From Selaginella moellendorffii (lineage: Eukaryota; Plantae; Lycopodiophyta), in NCBI RefSeq assembly GCF_000143415.4, contig NW_003314261.1:3154880-3218879 (forward strand): a stretch of 64,000 nt of DNA, in the 5' to 3' direction. Below, piece after piece: positions 10,286 through 15,881 of this stretch (positions within the stretch are counted from its first letter, which is position 1; each line of letters begins with the position of its first letter). The notes beneath the pieces are model-generated. The model was not told where the DNA came from. It saw nothing but the letters and a program-made list of their open reading frames with translations, and did not search any database. Both the position numbers and the translations under genes were made by a program.

Positions 10286-10669
10286 AGGTACGTGATTGAT
10301 CAGGCGACATCACGGTGTGTGAGCTGGTGCTCTAATCAGCAGGTTGTCAACCGCGACTTTCGTTTGGTCGATCGTCCGAGCAATGGAAGTGACAAACAGG
10401 CGGACAGCTTAGGATTCGGGTCTCGAACGAGTGAATGTGATGATCTCGTCATCGAAACCATACTCTTTATGGCTCAAACAGTTGTCCTTCAAATCTCTCA
10501 GCTCGACCATCTCCGGCATCACGGAGACAAGCTGGTGCTTCACACACCAGTTCGAAGAAAGCCATGATTTCTTCCCAGAGCGAGAATATTCTGCTTAATC
10601 AAATGTCAGCCATTGGATATAGGACCATCCAACGGATGGTATTCATTTAGGGCTCTTGGCCTAGGTTGC

Positions 10670-13600
10670 ATGAGCACAAGGGTTTTGGTCGCTCAGCTCA
10701 AAGAGTGTGGCAAATCCAGGGACCTGCGCAAGGGGAGGATCCTCCACGCCCAGATCGCCCAATGCAGCGACGCCAGGGAGAGCATCCAAGTCTCGAACAC
10801 CCTGGTGAGCATGTATTCAAAGTGTGGATCCATGGCCGAGGCGCGCCAGGCCTTCGACGCAATGCCGCGGCGCGACGTCGTCTCCTGGAACGCCCTCATC
10901 CTCGGCTACGCGCAAAACTCCCCTGGAGGAGGCCAGGCAGCGCTCGACTACTTCTCTCGAATGGATTGCCAGCCAAACTCCCTCACCTTTCTTGCTGCTA
11001 TCAAGGCTTGCGTCTCCATGGCAGCGATCGAGCAAGGCGGGCGAGATGCTGGAGAGGCTTTGATCAAGATAACGTCGCTGGAGAGAGGATTGGCGCTCCA
11101 TTCTCGAGCTGCCATCGCTGGCTGTGACTTTGAGGTGATGGTAGCAAACTCTTTGGTTGATATGTATGCTAAGTGTGGGAGTTTGATGGATGCTCGCAGG
11201 GTTTTCGACACGATGCCGGAGCACACGGTGGTGTCCTGGACTGTTCTCGTTCTCGGCTACGTAGATAACGGGGAGGCCGAGATGGCGCTCGAGCTCTTCG
11301 CTTGCATACCCGATGCTTGTGGACCGATTGGAGCTCGAGCTCTGGTTGCCGGACTGAAAGCTTGTAGCAGCCTGGCCGCTCGAGAAGAAGGAAAGCTTCA
11401 AGAAGAACAAGGTGGTGGTGGTGGTGGGGGGAGAGTTTTAAAAGTGGAGGCTCTGAAGAAGGCCGTGGCTCTCCACTCCCAGGCTATGGAGTGTGGCTGC
11501 GAGATGGAAGGCTTTGTGGCAAGCTCGCTGGTGGATCTTTACTCGAGGTGTGGGGATCTGGAAGAAGCTCGCAAGATCCTGGACAGGATGAGTTACGACT
11601 GCGTGGTATCGGCGACGGCACTCATGCTGGGATATGCCGAGCACGGACAGGGCGAGAAGGCGCTAGAGCTCTTCGCGAGGATGGGATCGAGAGACTCAAG
11701 AGCTTTTCTAGCTGCGCTCAAGGCTTGCATTTGCCTTGCAACGAAAGAAGATGGCAAGCTCGTTGGCGGAAGGATTGTCAAGCTAAAGTCGCTGGAGACG
11801 GGGATGGATATACACTTGGAAGCTGTGAGGTCTGGTCACAACGCTGGTGATATCTTCGTGGCCAGCAGCTTGGTGGACATGTATGCGAAGTGTGGGAGTA
11901 TGATCGATGCCAGAGGAGTTTTCGACAGGATGGCGAGTCACAGTGTAGTTTCCTGGACGGCTTTGGTTCTCGGCTACGCAGAGAACGAAGAAGAAGCTCT
12001 GGCTTTGGAGCTTCTCCCACGCGTGGAGAGTCCTAATGCCTTGACGTTCGTCGCTGGATTGAAGGCCTGCGCTGGCCTGGGGGCGAAAGAAGATGGCGAT
12101 CTAATCGAAGGAAAACTTGTCAAGCTTCTGTCCCTGGAAAAAGTTATGGCTTTGGAGCTCGAGTGTGGAGGGCTTACCTCGGACATCTTCGTGGCAAACA
12201 CTCTACTCGACGTTTACGCCAAGTGTGGGAGCACGCTGGATGCTCGCAGAGTTTTCGACAGGATGGAGTTTCATACCACGGTTTCATGGACGGCCTTGGT
12301 GATGGGATACGCCGAGAATGGCGAACACGAGCTCGCTCTGGAACTCTTCTCGTGCATGCGCTCGTCCATCGCTCCAAGCGCTCTAAGCTTTGTCGCTGCG
12401 ATGAGTGCTTGCTCCGGCCTGGCAGCGAAGGAGGAGGCCACCAAAGATGACGAGCAGAGTTTCAAGCTCAAGTCACTGGAACGAGCGAGAAACATCTACT
12501 GCGAGGCTGTGGAAAGTGGTTTCCAGGAGGACATCTTCGTGGCAAACTCGGCAGTGGATTTGCTCGCGAAGTGTGGGAGCCTGGTGGAGGCTCGTAGGAC
12601 TTTCGAGAGGATTCGTCGCCGCAACACGGTCTCGTGGAACGCTTTGATGCTGGGATACTCCGAAAACGGAGAAGGCGAGAAGTGTTTGAATCTCTTCTCT
12701 CGGATGGAGAAGGAATGCCAAGCTCCGGATGCTCGGACTTTCTTCGCAGCGCTCAAGGGGTGTGTAGTTCTTGCATCCAAGGAAGACGAGAACCAGGCCG
12801 AAAAGAAGAAGCTCTCGCTGGAAACAGGCATGGCGATCCATCTCCAAGCCGAGAAGAGTGGCTGCTGCGACTCGGACGTTTTCGTGGCGAGCACTTTGGT
12901 GGAGATGTACGCGAAGTGTGGCAGCCTGGTTGACGCTCGGAAAGTTTTCGACAAGATCCCCGGCCTCAATCTTTCGGCATGGACCGCTCTCATCCAAGGC
13001 TATGCCGAGGGTGGCGAGGAGCTGGCGGCTCTGGAGATTTTCGCGAGCTTGCAGTCGAGGAAAGGCTACGTAGCAAGCGTCCCAGCCTTCGTCGCGGCCA
13101 TCAAAGCCTGCACTGGCCTGGCGGCCAAGGAGAAGGTGGGAGCAGCAAAGATCGATGGAAGAACCGTCAAGGTGGAGTCACTGCGATCCGGCATGGCGAT
13201 TCACTCCCAGGTGGAGAGAAGCGATCACAGCGCCAACACAATGGTGGCGAACACTCTGATCGACATGTACGCCAGGTGTGGAAGCCTGGTGGACGCGCGG
13301 AGAGTGTTTGACAGGGCGATGATCCACAGCGACTCGTCCTGGAACACACTGATCCTGGGCTATGCCGAGAACGCCGAGGCGGAGCTAGCTCTCGAGCTTT
13401 TCTCGTGCATGGGAAGTGGAAGCGGAGGATCTCCTCGTCCAAACTCCCGGACTTTGGTGGCGGCTCTCAAGGCTTGCAGCGCGGTGGCATCGCTGGGCAT
13501 CGCGAGATCTATCCACTCGGAGCTCCTGCGGCGGGGGATCGATCGAAACGTCGTGCTGGAGAGCTCGCTGGTGGACGTCTATGGCAAATGCGGTAGCATG

Positions 13601-14113
13601 GCGGCGGCTCAGCGAGAGTTTGACACCATCACTCGAGTGAAGCGCGACTTGGTCACCTGGAACGCAATTCTAGCCGGGTATGCTCGCCAGGGAGACGCCG
13701 CCAGCGTTCTTGGCTTGTTTCCGAGGTTCCGGGAAGAAGGCTTGCGTCCGGACGAGATCACGCTAGCGTCGGTTCTCACCGCGTGTAGCCGTGCGGGGCT
13801 CGTGGACAAAGGGAGGGAGATCTTCGAGAGTATGAGCTCCAGCTATGGCGTGGCTCCCTCGCTGGAGCACTACCACTGCATGGTTGATCTTCTTGGGCGA
13901 GCGAACCGGCTGGAGGAGGCGATGGCGGTGGTGAAATCCATGCCGTTTGAGGCGAATGGAGTAACTTGGATGACGGTTCTTGCGGCGTGTGGGAAGTGGA
14001 AGAACGCTGTGGTTGGAAAGGTGGCGTTTGATTCTTTGCTGGAGCTGGATCAAGGCGATGCTGCCACTTACGTTTCCATGGCAAACATCTATCACGACTT
14101 GATTGATCTTTAG
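10670..14113 (+). CDS. Intronless PLS-class pentatricopeptide repeat protein with E domain (no DYW); L motifs carry inserts
   Basis: Repeated ANSLVDMYAKCGS..DARRVFD.M....VVSWTAL..GYA units. C-terminal HYHCMVDLLGRA...MPFEAN..TWMTVLAAC E motif. First in-frame ATG at 10670. Confidence 0.93.
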   Translation: MSTRVLVAQLKECGKSRDLRKGRILHAQIAQCSDARESIQVSNTLVSMYSKCGSMAEARQAFDAMPRRDVVSWNALILGYAQNSPGGGQAALDYFSRMDCQPNSLTFLAAIKACVSMAAIEQGGRDAGEALIKITSLERGLALHSRAAIAGCDFEVMVANSLVDMYAKCGSLMDARRVFDTMPEHTVVSWTVLVLGYVDNGEAEMALELFACIPDACGPIGARALVAGLKACSSLAAREEGKLQEEQGGGGGGGRVLKVEALKKAVALHSQAMECGCEMEGFVASSLVDLYSRCGDLEEARKILDRMSYDCVVSATALMLGYAEHGQGEKALELFARMGSRDSRAFLAALKACICLATKEDGKLVGGRIVKLKSLETGMDIHLEAVRSGHNAGDIFVASSLVDMYAKCGSMIDARGVFDRMASHSVVSWTALVLGYAENEEEALALELLPRVESPNALTFVAGLKACAGLGAKEDGDLIEGKLVKLLSLEKVMALELECGGLTSDIFVANTLLDVYAKCGSTLDARRVFDRMEFHTTVSWTALVMGYAENGEHELALELFSCMRSSIAPSALSFVAAMSACSGLAAKEEATKDDEQSFKLKSLERARNIYCEAVESGFQEDIFVANSAVDLLAKCGSLVEARRTFERIRRRNTVSWNALMLGYSENGEGEKCLNLFSRMEKECQAPDARTFFAALKGCVVLASKEDENQAEKKKLSLETGMAIHLQAEKSGCCDSDVFVASTLVEMYAKCGSLVDARKVFDKIPGLNLSAWTALIQGYAEGGEELAALEIFASLQSRKGYVASVPAFVAAIKACTGLAAKEKVGAAKIDGRTVKVESLRSGMAIHSQVERSDHSANTMVANTLIDMYARCGSLVDARRVFDRAMIHSDSSWNTLILGYAENAEAELALELFSCMGSGSGGSPRPNSRTLVAALKACSAVASLGIARSIHSELLRRGIDRNVVLESSLVDVYGKCGSMAAAQREFDTITRVKRDLVTWNAILAGYARQGDAASVLGLFPRFREEGLRPDEITLASVLTACSRAGLVDKGREIFESMSSSYGVAPSLEHYHCMVDLLGRANRLEEAMAVVKSMPFEANGVTWMTVLAACGKWKNAVVGKVAFDSLLELDQGDAATYVSMANIYHDLIDL

Positions 14114-15881
14114 TGATCCCTCCTCGATTCGAGCAGTGCTAGAGAAAGCAAAGGTCTCTTCGTTTACCGATCTGGATTTGAGAGTCTCGTCTCTCAACGA
14201 GCAAATCAAAGTCCATGGAAGAAAGGGAAACGTGTATGGAGCGCGGAGGATCTTTGATGCCATTGGAGCGTCCCGAGATTCTTATTCCTGGAACTTTATG
14301 CTCATCGCATATACCCAGAATGGGCATCTGCGAGATGCTGAGCAGCTGTTTGAGAGAATGCCTTCCAGGAATCTTGTGGCGTGGACGGCCATGTTGGTGG
14401 CGTATGCCTCCTTTGGATATCTCGAAGAAGCGGAGCGCATGTTTCACCAGATGCCCAGCAAAGACACGCCTGCTTGGAATTCTATGCTTTCAGCATATGC
14501 CAAGAACGGGCATCTTGAAAATGCACGTCAGGTGTTTGATCTTATGCCCCACCGCAGTATATTGTCATGGAACTCGATTCTTTCAGCATATGCCCAAGGT
14601 GGGCATCTTGAATCAGCCAAAAGTGTTTTTGACAGGATCCCAGAACCCGACATGATATCCTACAATGCTATTCTCTCGGCATATGTGAATGGAGGAATCT
14701 TGCGGGATGCCAGGAAGATCTTTGAGGGCATGGCGCTGAGGGACATGGTCTCGTGGGCGACACTGCTCTGTGGTTATGCCCAAGCCGGGCATATCTCTCA
14801 AGCGCATGAAATCTTTTTTGAAAATATGCCAGAGTGGGATTTAATTTCTTGCAGCTCAGTTTTGGTGATGTATTCCGGAGCCGGAAACATCAACGATGCT
14901 AAAACATTGTTTGACAACCTCCCACAAACAGATCTAGTAGCCTGGAACTCTCTTCTTACGGCATATACCCAAACCGGGCATCTCGAAAAAGCTAGGCAAA
15001 TATATCTTAGAATGCCAGAGCACGACTTGGTATCCTGGACGCTTATGCTGACTGTCTATCTAGAAGCAGGAAAACTTATGGAAGCAGAAGATATACTCGT
15101 AAAGATGCCACACAGAGACCTCGTAAGCTGGAACGCAATGCTGACTGGATATGCCCAATCCGGGCACCTTGAGAAAGCAAAATGCCTGTTTGACAGCATG
15201 CCTCTCAGGGATGTCATGACATGGACGGGGATGATGTCAGCATACGCTCAACACGAGTGTTTGAGCGAAGCAAAGCACCTGTTTGATGACATGCCACAAC
15301 GAAACCAGGTGACGTGGACGGCGCTGCTCGTGGCATATGCCCAGAACGGGCACGTCAGCACTGCCAGCGAGCTGTTTCGGGCAATTCCGGAGCTGGATTT
15401 GGTGCTGTGGACTGCCATGCTGGCAGCACACGCCCACAACGGCCGCTACGCAGAGGCATTTGAAGTGTTTGAGAGAATGAAGCCCATCTTTCCTCCGGAG
15501 GAGCTGTGCTTCAACTCTATACTCGTTGCTTGCAGCCATGCCGGGAGAGTGTATGCTGGGAGGCAGTACTTCCGATCCATGGCTGTGGATTTTGGGCTGC
15601 GGCCGACAAGGCAGCATTACTGTTGCATGGTCGATCTGCTGGGACGAGCCGGGCATCTGGACGACACGGAGGACCTCATCAAGCATATGCCGTTCGAGCC
15701 GGATGTGTTCGACTGGACGTGCCTGCTCGCAGCTTGTTTGGGTCACAAGGAGAAGAAGACCATCGCAAACGCAGCGGCCAAAGAGGTGCTTCGTTCGAAT
15801 CCTCGCTGCCGAGCGGCCTACGTGTTGCTCAATAATGTGGGTGGCCACATGACAATGAAACATCAGAATACGCCATCTTGA
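14103..15881 (+). CDS. PPR protein rich in 31-aa SS-type repeats, with E domain; true start uncertain
   Basis: Tandem (S)WN.ML.AYAQ.GHL..A...F..MP.RD repeats and HYCCMVDLLGRAG...MPFEPDVFDWTCLLAAC. First in-frame ATG is only at 14298. Confidence 0.85.
   Translation: MIFSDPSSIRAVLEKAKVSSFTDLDLRVSSLNEQIKVHGRKGNVYGARRIFDAIGASRDSYSWNFMLIAYTQNGHLRDAEQLFERMPSRNLVAWTAMLVAYASFGYLEEAERMFHQMPSKDTPAWNSMLSAYAKNGHLENARQVFDLMPHRSILSWNSILSAYAQGGHLESAKSVFDRIPEPDMISYNAILSAYVNGGILRDARKIFEGMALRDMVSWATLLCGYAQAGHISQAHEIFFENMPEWDLISCSSVLVMYSGAGNINDAKTLFDNLPQTDLVAWNSLLTAYTQTGHLEKARQIYLRMPEHDLVSWTLMLTVYLEAGKLMEAEDILVKMPHRDLVSWNAMLTGYAQSGHLEKAKCLFDSMPLRDVMTWTGMMSAYAQHECLSEAKHLFDDMPQRNQVTWTALLVAYAQNGHVSTASELFRAIPELDLVLWTAMLAAHAHNGRYAEAFEVFERMKPIFPPEELCFNSILVACSHAGRVYAGRQYFRSMAVDFGLRPTRQHYCCMVDLLGRAGHLDDTEDLIKHMPFEPDVFDWTCLLAACLGHKEKKTIANAAAKEVLRSNPRCRAAYVLLNNVGGHMTMKHQNTPS

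What the first reader, a model, noticed from the sequence alone, without database searches (positions are those of the whole stretch)
10970..13200. PPR protein whose L motifs each carry a ~15-25 aa insert, a possible undescribed PPR motif class
Seen: seven consecutive L-type motifs have extra sequence between the two helices: AIEQGGRDAGEALIKITS, AREEGKLQEEQGGGGGGRVLKVEA, TKEDGKLVGGRIVKLKS, AKEDGDLIEGKLVKLLS, AKEEATKDDEQSFKLKS, SKEDENQAEKKKLS, AKEKVGAAKIDGRTVKVES. Consensus is roughly A-K-E-E-G-K-x-h-x-G-[KR]-h-V-K-h-x-S-L-E. The last L motif before the E region has no insert. Known: canonical L motifs are 35-36 aa two-helix hairpins. Inference: K-L-V-GG-R-I-V-K and K-I-DG-R-T-V-K look like basic beta-hairpins projecting periodically from the solenoid. 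They could add an RNA- or partner-binding surface, for example for a trans DYW deaminase, since this protein has none. That would matter in a lineage known for extreme organellar C-to-U editing. I cannot confirm it is unpublished.
Basis: partly seen in the sequence, partly recalled or inferred. Interest (0 to 1): 0.75.

Follow-up and report, generated by a model that had tools for sequence, protein, structure and literature searches.

The report
Hairpin-extended L repeats in PPR gene
This spikemoss gene for an organelle RNA-binding (PPR) protein has seven repeats that each carry an extra ~16 residues, mostly predicted to form a small beta-hairpin. The same extended repeat marks an old, apparently undescribed PPR subfamily in lycophytes and ferns, which this scan has already met elsewhere in this genome.

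Summary
Window 10670-14113 (+) is one uninterrupted 1147-codon PLS/E-type PPR gene of Selaginella moellendorffii. Its seven internal L motifs are 49-59 aa long instead of 35. The first and last L motifs are canonical.

The insert is not private to this gene. An HMM test splits 277 relatives cleanly into proteins with several long L motifs and proteins with none. Long-L proteins occur in Selaginella, Diphasiastrum, three fern genomes and fern transcripts. Both lineages share the anchors E, G, K and S-L-E.

The modal insert is 16 aa and most resembles the 16 residues that follow it (p=0.0004). That points to a 48-nt tandem duplication.

AlphaFold (pLDDT 96 and 93) predicts a longer helix a plus a tight 3:3 beta-hairpin for four of the seven inserts. 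One is marginal and two are degenerate.

The inserts are not notably basic (net +0.65). They also occur in proteins with their own DYW domain, so the "dock for a trans deaminase" idea is not supported.

My best reading is a structural clasp at the a-b junction of the L motif; the function is inferred. The scan found this before on other DNA (s1-344428, s1-398975).

The parts
10670..14113 (+). Intronless PLS-class, E-type PPR gene (1147 aa plus stop). Architecture: L-S-P, then (long L-S-P) x7, then L2-S2-E1 and a truncated E2. No DYW domain.
   Evidence: The database model P0001 (966 aa, 100% identical) starts at an internal Met and keeps the inserts.
10979..11134 (+). Long L motif 1 (52 aa). 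Insert at 11024-11077. Degenerate: predicted as helix extension plus a low-confidence loop, with no hairpin.
   Evidence: long HMM 47.5 vs short 18.4 bits; pLDDT 61-80
11333..11509 (+). Long L motif 2 (59 aa). Insert at 11378-11452 with a Gly7 run. Predicted hairpin strands 242-244/255-257 around a disordered Gly loop.
   Evidence: pLDDT <50 at aa 249-251
11696..11851 (+). Long L motif 3 (52 aa). Insert at 11741-11791. Helix a of 17 residues, a 3:3 hairpin KLV-GG-RIV, then helix b.
   Evidence: (67.8 vs 12.5 bits)
12038..12184 (+). Long L motif 4 (49 aa). Insert at 12083-12133. Hairpin DLI-EG-KLV. Helix b lacks the usual I-H.
12380..12532 (+). Long L motif 5 (51 aa). Insert at 12425-12475. Hairpin predicted at lower confidence.
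   Evidence: pLDDT 75-87
12731..12877 (+). Long L motif 6 (49 aa). Insert at 12776-12817, only 14 aa. Predicted as a loop, with no hairpin.
13079..13237 (+). Long L motif 7 (53 aa). Insert at 13124-13180. Marginal hairpin with 2-residue strands.
   Evidence: pLDDT 68-88
13445..13549 (+). Canonical L2 motif (35 aa) with no insert.
   Evidence: (short HMM 32.6 vs long 18.0 bits)
13958..14110 (+). E1 motif and the first half of E2. The protein ends shortly after the N-I-Y of E2, as in fern and Selaginella long-L relatives. The start coordinate is approximate.
   Evidence: (PF20431, 21.8 bits, below cut-off)

Best explanation
This is a translated Selaginella moellendorffii PLS-class (E-type) PPR gene, probably an organellar RNA-editing specificity factor.

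Shown: it belongs to an old subfamily, shared by lycophytes and ferns, in which every internal L1 motif is about 51 aa instead of 35. The extra 16 residues sit exactly at the helix a / helix b junction.

Supported statistically: the insert most likely arose as a 16-codon tandem duplication of the loop plus the start of helix b. It then spread with the P-L-S triplets.

Predicted: in the well-preserved copies it extends helix a by about one turn and forms a tight two-stranded beta-hairpin with a D/G-G turn. Its conserved residues are the inward-facing hydrophobics, the turn Gly and an E...K pair.

Inferred: the hairpin acts as a rigid clasp that fixes the angle between the two L-motif helices, and so fixes the geometry of the whole array. 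It is a built-in structural solution for the one PPR motif type whose conformation is known to limit RNA binding. It is probably not a conserved docking site. The specificity positions are kept (5th residue V/L/F, last residue D/N/E), so each long L probably still occupies one nucleotide.
For: Gene and inserts.

Inserts are coding. The ORF is continuous and the inserts are 42-75 nt, all multiples of 3. None has GT...AG at its boundaries. Protein models of dozens of paralogues keep them. Eight EukProt transcriptome ORFs keep them; the one I looked up, P0019, is from Pteridium aquilinum.

Subfamily. In 277 relatives, each protein has either two or more long L motifs or none. Long L occurs in Selaginella, Diphasiastrum P0111, Adiantum capillus-veneris, A. 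nelumboides, Ceratopteris and a Pteridium transcript.

Shared anchors. E20, G27, K31, S34 and L35 are conserved in 225 Selaginella and 142 fern motifs.

Tree. On the C-terminal region, which lacks the trait, the long/short state needs 4 changes against at least 26 in shuffles.

Duplication. The best internal self-similarity of the motif is at offset exactly 16, with the insert against the next 16 aa, z=3.7 and p=0.0004. HMMER also aligned the insert to the canonical helix-b start of 9kfx.

Structure. AF2 fragment: pLDDT 95.9, pTM 0.90. Full length: pLDDT 92.9. Hairpins are predicted at inserts 2-5. The best solved matches are the RNA-bound synthetic PPR-DYW 9kfx (TM 0.71) and the MORF9-bound PLS9 5iww, and both lack these residues.

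Clasp idea. In solved PLS structures, the orientation of L-motif helix b limits RNA binding and MORF corrects it (PMC13041630; PMC13324415). Lycophytes and other non-seed plants lack MORF (PMC8809517). Conserved positions are the structural ones and exposed positions vary.
Against: No experiment or coordinates were available, so I could not measure where the hairpins point or what they touch. The clasp role is inference.

Mosses, and many lycophyte and fern PLS proteins, work or exist with ordinary 35-aa L motifs and no MORF, so a clasp is not required.

Two or three of this gene's seven inserts are degenerate. That suggests weak constraint in this copy.

Covariation inside the insert is weak (z about 3-3.6) and confounded by lineage.

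The tree is a quick LG+G4 search on 185 columns of a biased sample, and eight fern short-L proteins nest beside the Selaginella long-L clade.

Confidence: 0.55

Rival explanations
1. The hairpins are an added RNA-contact surface. The conserved Lys after strand 2, and variable K/R on the hairpin, would touch the phosphate backbone of the bound RNA or of RNA held by the next superhelical turn. That would raise affinity where L motifs read bases poorly.
For: K31 is 74% conserved in the set, and K/R stands at the equivalent column in about two thirds of 784 motifs together with E. L motifs of non-seed plants are thought to discriminate bases poorly (PMC8110955). Lys-phosphate contacts drive compaction in P-type arrays (PMC13041630).
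Against: The insert is mixed-charge, with net +0.65 and about 3 acidic residues per 16. From general PPR geometry (my knowledge, not measured here), the a-b turn lies at the end of helix a opposite the base-reading 5th residue. K31 pairs statistically with the conserved Glu, which suggests a salt bridge.
Confidence: 0.2
2. The insert is a largely neutral, tolerated remnant of a 48-nt duplication. It persists and is 'conserved' only because it must fold compactly so as not to disrupt the solenoid. It has no function of its own.
For: Signal for a duplication origin. L motifs tolerate variation. In this gene, inserts 1, 6 and 7 are degenerate and insert 2 carries a Gly7 expansion. Information content of the insert is lower than that of the helices: 1.8 vs 2.2-2.9 bits in Selaginella and 1.2 vs 2.4-2.6 in ferns.
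Against: It is retained in every internal L motif of hundreds of motifs, in two lineages that split about 400 Myr ago by my estimate. Length mode and anchor residues are kept. Within this sample proteins are all-or-none, which suggests selection for uniform geometry.
Confidence: 0.17
3. The hairpins are a periodic docking surface for a protein partner. The first reader proposed a DYW deaminase supplied in trans. Another editosome component or self-association is also possible.
For: The display is periodic, every third repeat. In seed plants the L motif is where MORF proteins bind. This protein lacks a DYW domain.
Against: Long L motifs co-occur with a cis DYW domain in at least eight proteins. 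The exposed hairpin positions are variable, so no common surface is conserved. In known cases a trans DYW is recruited through the C-terminal E/E+ region, not through L motifs (PMC13324415).
Confidence: 0.07
4. The inserts are short unannotated introns or an assembly or annotation artefact, and are absent from the mature protein.
For: By my knowledge Selaginella introns can be very short, and 42-75 nt is within that range. RNA reads could not be checked here.
Against: None has GT...AG boundaries. All are in frame and free of stops. They are conserved at the amino-acid level across paralogues and across lycophytes and ferns. They are present in assembled fern transcripts. They are predicted to be structured at high confidence.
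Confidence: 0.01

Closest known systems
Canonical L1 motif of PLS-class PPR editing factors (35-36 aa; Cheng et al. 2016 nomenclature, as summarised in PMC13324415)
   Same: Same place in the P-L-S triplet. Same helix a signature (T-F-v-x-x-L-K-A-C) and same helix b signature (L-E-x-G-x-x-I-H...G). Same type of 5th and last residues (V/L ... D/N). Same flanking S1 (Y-A-K-C-G) and P1 motifs.
   Different: There are 14-24 extra residues (mode 16) between the helices. They are predicted as a helix-a extension plus a beta-hairpin. The motif is 49-59 aa here and 51 aa in the family, giving a 117-aa triplet period.
Solved PLS arrays: synthetic PPR-DYW with RNA (PDB 9kfx) and designer (PLS)3 with MORF9 (PDB 5iww)
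   Same: These are the best structural matches of the model (TM 0.71 and 0.62, rmsd 3.5 and 3.2 A; 38% and 30% identity). They share the right-handed solenoid of helix pairs.
   Different: Both chains have a gap where the insert lies. No solved PPR chain found here has a hairpin in an L motif. A 2026 review of PPR structures mentions beta-hairpins only in the DYW gating region (PMC13041630).
MORF/RIP cofactors of seed-plant editing factors
   Same: They act on the L motif and fix the orientation of its helix b so that the 5th and last residues can read a base. The insert sits at the junction that sets that same orientation, in plants that lack MORF.
   Different: MORF is a separate protein that binds in trans. 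The hairpin is part of the repeat. No equivalence of contact surface or effect was tested here, so this is an analogy only.
SS-type (tandem 31-aa S motif) PPR arrays of Selaginella
   Same: Another lycophyte-enriched departure from the standard P-L-S arrangement (PMC8809517). One such gene lies directly downstream in this window.
   Different: SS arrays drop L motifs altogether. The long-L subfamily keeps the triplet and enlarges L.

Membership tests
PPR protein, PLS class | Tandem helix-hairpin repeats of about 31-36 aa in a repeating P-L-S order | tested here: met
   Pfam PPR E=1e-87 and PPR_2 E=7.5e-78. The L-S-P periodicity has Y-x-K-C-G S motifs and V-V-S-W-N P motifs. AF2 gives an all-helical-pair solenoid that matches 9kfx and 5iww.
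PPR protein, PLS class | L motifs of 35-36 aa | tested here: not met
   Seven of nine L motifs are 49-59 aa. Only the first and the last (L2) are 35-36 aa.
E-subclass PLS editing factor | C-terminal E1 and E2 motifs after P2-L2-S2 | tested here: inconclusive
   Pfam E_motif scores 21.8 bits, below the 27.3 cut-off. E1 is recognisable and E2 stops about 8 residues after N-I-Y. Fern and Selaginella long-L relatives end similarly.
DYW-type editing factor | C-terminal DYW cytidine deaminase domain (PF14432) | tested here: not met
   No PF14432 hit. The protein ends in E2.
Organellar RNA-editing specificity factor (function) | Organelle targeting and a defined editing site | not testable with these tools
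   The N-terminus is uncertain: the first ATG falls inside the first L motif and no transit peptide is evident. No target prediction was attempted.
Long-L PLS subfamily (informal; lycophytes and ferns) | Internal L1 motifs carry a ~16-aa insert with anchors E-(6)-G-(3)-K-(2)-S-L-E, while terminal L motifs stay canonical | tested here: met
   The long-L HMM beats the short-L HMM at six motifs. The terminal L motifs are canonical. The protein falls inside the Selaginella long-L clade, as P0001.
Long-L PLS subfamily (informal; lycophytes and ferns) | The insert folds as a helix-a extension plus a 3:3 beta-hairpin | tested here: inconclusive
   Prediction only. It is clear for inserts 2-5, marginal for 7 and absent for 1 and 6.

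The most novel reading that the evidence does not exclude
The hairpin-clasped long L motif is a cis-acting, built-in counterpart of the MORF cofactor. It locks helix b of the L motif in the RNA-binding-competent orientation. If so, long-L arrays would be intrinsically cofactor-independent, and the 16-residue module could be transplanted to make MORF-independent designer PLS editors.
Probability: 0.2. Interest if true: 0.8.

Novelty: new variant of a known kind. Interest (0 to 1): 0.55.

Why it matters
PPR proteins are the largest RNA-binding family in land plants and the scaffold for programmable RNA editors. The L motif is their least understood repeat. Its conformation limits RNA binding, and in seed plants it needs MORF helpers.

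A second, structurally distinct L-motif class would matter in three ways. It is conserved since before lycophytes and ferns diverged, and it is present throughout arrays in the plants with the heaviest organellar editing.

(1) Motif-calling tools and PPR-code predictions may mis-register these proteins.
(2) It gives a natural experiment on how L-motif geometry is controlled without MORF.
(3) It offers a compact module to test in designer PLS editors.

For this particular gene the result is one more member of that subfamily, with partly decayed inserts.

Tried and rejected
Exonic status therefore rests on ORF continuity, missing splice signals, conservation and fern transcripts.

Key papers. 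Cheng et al. 2016 and Gutmann et al. 2020 are not held. Eight full-text searches and seven papers read gave no description of a long or hairpin-bearing L motif.

First detector. My first regex (Cys to Tyr distance) became noisy when loosened. I replaced it with competing long and short HMMs.

Logan proteins. Their organism could not be identified; only the run SRR33208241 is given. They are closest to each other and then to Diphasiastrum.

Covariation. Mutual information on 784 triplets was dominated by lineage signal and gave only weak within-insert couplings.

Model geometry. Model coordinates are not exposed, so hairpin orientation and contacts could not be measured.

Frameshift in E2. I considered it because the +1 frame after the stop resembles the rest of E2. 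I think it unlikely, because relatives end at the same place.

Searches not run.
Full report
WHAT IS THERE

Window 10613-14113 (+) is a single open reading frame. Its first ATG is at 10670, giving 1147 codons. Pfam calls it a PPR protein (PPR E=1e-87, PPR_2 E=7.5e-78). It has a sub-threshold E motif at the C-terminus and no DYW domain.

A 966-aa database model is 100% identical. It lies on a 6.95-Mb contig that also carries a named Selaginella moellendorffii PPR gene (P0024). The closest relatives are S. moellendorffii paralogues at 43-47% identity. The window is therefore S. moellendorffii.

That model starts at an internal Met. It omits the first 181 residues of the ORF, which are good PPR repeats, but it keeps the inserts it covers.

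CHECKING THE OBSERVATION

I measured the distance from the Cys of the helix-a signature (L-K-A-C) to the Tyr of the following S motif (Y-A-K-C-G).
- In seven consecutive L motifs it is 52, 59, 52, 49, 51, 49 and 53 residues.
- In the last L motif (L2) it is 35, and in the N-terminal one it is 36.

Their coordinates are 11024-11077, 11378-11452, 11741-11791, 12083-12133, 12425-12475, 12776-12817 and 13124-13180.

ARE THE INSERTS TRANSLATED?

Each insert is 42-75 nt, a multiple of three and free of stops. None begins with GT or ends with AG at its boundary. They are conserved at the protein level in dozens of paralogues whose models retain them.

Eight transcriptome-derived ORFs in EukProt carry the same long motifs. 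The one I looked up, P0019, is EP00250 Pteridium aquilinum.

I could not lay S. moellendorffii RNA reads on this locus, so that direct test remains open.

HOW WIDESPREAD IS IT?

In Selaginella paralogues the Cys-to-Tyr distance is bimodal, with sharp modes at 35/36 and at 51. The triplet period is exactly 117 aa in many proteins.

I built one HMM from 51-aa L motifs and one from 35-aa L motifs and let them compete on all proteins retrieved. The result is a clean dichotomy. A protein has either several long L motifs plus one to three canonical ones at the ends, or none at all.

Long-L proteins include:
- nearly all the Selaginella hits;
- Diphasiastrum complanatum P0111, which also has a DYW domain;
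- many unnamed Logan-assembled proteins;
- after a search seeded with the Pteridium protein, 8 of 8 Adiantum capillus-veneris hits, 11 of 11 A. nelumboides hits and 10 of 10 Ceratopteris richardii hits.

None of the Cryptomeria, Ginkgo, Sphagnum or Calypogeia proteins retrieved has long L motifs. Many Diphasiastrum and fern proteins also lack them. These samples are the top hits of three searches. They are not a census.

ONE ORIGIN?

Logos from 225 Selaginella and 142 fern long L motifs share the same anchors: Glu at the end of helix a, the turn Gly, a Lys after strand 2, and Ser-Leu-Glu at the start of helix b.

I built a quick maximum-likelihood tree on the C-terminal P2-L2-S2-E1 region, which does not contain the trait.
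- The long/short state needs only 4 changes, against at least 26 in 200 label shuffles.
- Fern long-L proteins form a clade (SH-aLRT 99).
- Most Selaginella long-L proteins form a clade (98).
- Both are separated from a supported cluster (96) of short-L proteins from Diphasiastrum, conifers, Ginkgo, Sphagnum and a liverwort.

Eight short-L fern proteins sit next to the Selaginella clade, so a single origin is compatible but not proven.

WHERE DID THE INSERT COME FROM?

I scanned the long-L profile against itself at all starts and offsets. The best match is at offset exactly 16, aligning the insert with the 16 residues that follow it (E/E, G/G, V/I, K/K).
- Against column permutations this gives z=3.7 and p=0.0004.
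- The insert matches the equivalent stretch of the canonical motif equally well, with p=0.0002.
- Independently, HMMER aligned one insert of this gene to the canonical loop and helix-b start of the solved synthetic PPR-DYW.

The most economical origin is a 48-nt tandem duplication of the loop plus the first part of helix b, followed by divergence of the first copy.

PREDICTED STRUCTURE

A 411-residue fragment with three long L motifs was folded with an alignment of 78 in-register fragments. It gave mean pLDDT 95.9 and pTM 0.90. In each long L, helix a is 17 residues long. It is followed by a 3:3 beta-hairpin with a two-residue turn (for example K-L-V / G-G / R-I-V) and then helix b.

The full-length protein gave pLDDT 92.9.
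- Inserts 3, 4 and 5 are the same hairpins.
- Insert 2 is a hairpin whose loop is swollen by a Gly7 run, with pLDDT below 50.
- Insert 7 has only two-residue strands, at pLDDT 68-88.
- Inserts 1 and 6 have no strands.

The closest solved structures are the RNA-bound synthetic PPR-DYW (9kfx, TM 0.71) and the MORF9-bound designer PLS array (5iww). Both have a gap where the insert lies.

In a two-residue-turn hairpin, the conserved hydrophobics at family positions 25 and 30 fall on one face. The variable positions 24 and 29 fall on the other. This is standard hairpin geometry, not something I measured on the model.

WHAT DOES IT DO?

Nothing here is experimental. The conserved residues are the kind that hold a small fold together: two hydrophobics on one face, the turn Gly, and a Glu...Lys/Arg pair that co-occurs in 515 of 784 motifs. 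The exposed positions vary.

The insert is mixed-charge, with mean net +0.65 +/- 1.7. It sits precisely at the junction that sets the angle between the two helices of the L motif. In solved PLS structures, helix b of the L motif is mis-oriented for base reading until a MORF protein binds and rotates it (PMC13041630; PMC13324415). Non-seed plants lack MORF (PMC8809517).

My best-supported reading is that the extended helix plus hairpin is a structural clasp. It would fix L-motif geometry, and hence array geometry. I give the clasp role itself about 0.35-0.4. The descriptive part of the explanation I hold at above 0.9.

Rivals are:
- contact with the RNA backbone through the conserved Lys;
- a tolerated duplication remnant;
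- a partner dock.

That is weakened by at least eight long-L proteins that carry their own DYW domain and by the variable exposed face.

IS IT KNOWN?

L motifs are described as 35 or 36 aa in current literature (PMC13324415). Eight full-text searches found no mention of a long or hairpin-bearing L motif. The readings covered a 2024 general review, a 2026 review of PPR structures, the 2026 kingdom-wide survey and the synthetic S-type, PLS and KP papers.

The two papers most likely to mention it, Cheng et al. 2016 and Gutmann et al. 2020, are not in the library. I put about a one-in-four chance on it being noted there.

This scan has already met the same feature on other pieces of this genome.
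- s1-344428 reports lycophytes plus ferns and a predicted hairpin. I re-derived both here independently.
- s1-398975 adds hornworts, which I did not test.

VERDICT

The feature is a new variant of a known kind of repeat. This gene is one, partly decayed, member of a large old subfamily. Interest is moderate to good for PPR specialists. The function is still open.

Noticed in passing
window 14103-15881 (+): Directly downstream, and overlapping the stop of the long-L gene by a few bases, lies a 592-codon ORF in the +1 frame. It is a tandem array of 31-aa S-type PPR motifs (the SS type typical of Selaginella) with an E-like C-terminus (Pfam PPR E=9e-97). It has no ATG near its start; the first Met is well inside the array.
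   Followed up: partly
window 14096-14160 (+): Right after the stop codon (TAG TGA at 14111-14116), the +1 frame reads F-S-D-P-S-S-I-R-A-V-L. Read in register after the N-I-Y-H-D of the gene, this resembles the rest of a canonical E2 motif (W/F, D, v/I, R, M/L at the expected spacing). A 1-nt frameshift would fuse the two PPR arrays. However, fern and Selaginella relatives also end just after N-I-Y, so the stop is probably genuine.
   Followed up: partly
window 11378-11452 (+): Insert 2 contains a run of seven Gly codons. GC3 is 0.20 against 0.67 for the gene, and the repeat is rich in GGT/GGA. It looks like a microsatellite-like expansion inside the hairpin loop, and it is the only stretch predicted disordered (pLDDT <50).
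   Followed up: no
window 10670-11212 (+): The 966-aa database model of this gene starts at an internal Met (residue 182 of the ORF). It leaves out a canonical L-S-P triplet and the first long L motif. The ORF's own first Met falls inside the first L motif and no transit peptide is evident, so the true 5' end is unresolved.
   Followed up: no
loci L001 and L002 (Logan run SRR33208241): Two long-L PPR genes (P0027 and P0033) come from the same unnamed genomic run. These Logan proteins are about 40-50% identical to each other and closer to Diphasiastrum than to Selaginella. They probably represent a third lineage whose organism could not be named with these tools.
   Followed up: partly
proteins (ferns): Fern long-L proteins share a distinctive helix-a signature (L-Q-A-C-G-x-L-A-E-K-E) and a C-terminus that stops a few residues after N-I/V-Y-A of E2. 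Few of those listed carry a DYW domain.
   Followed up: no
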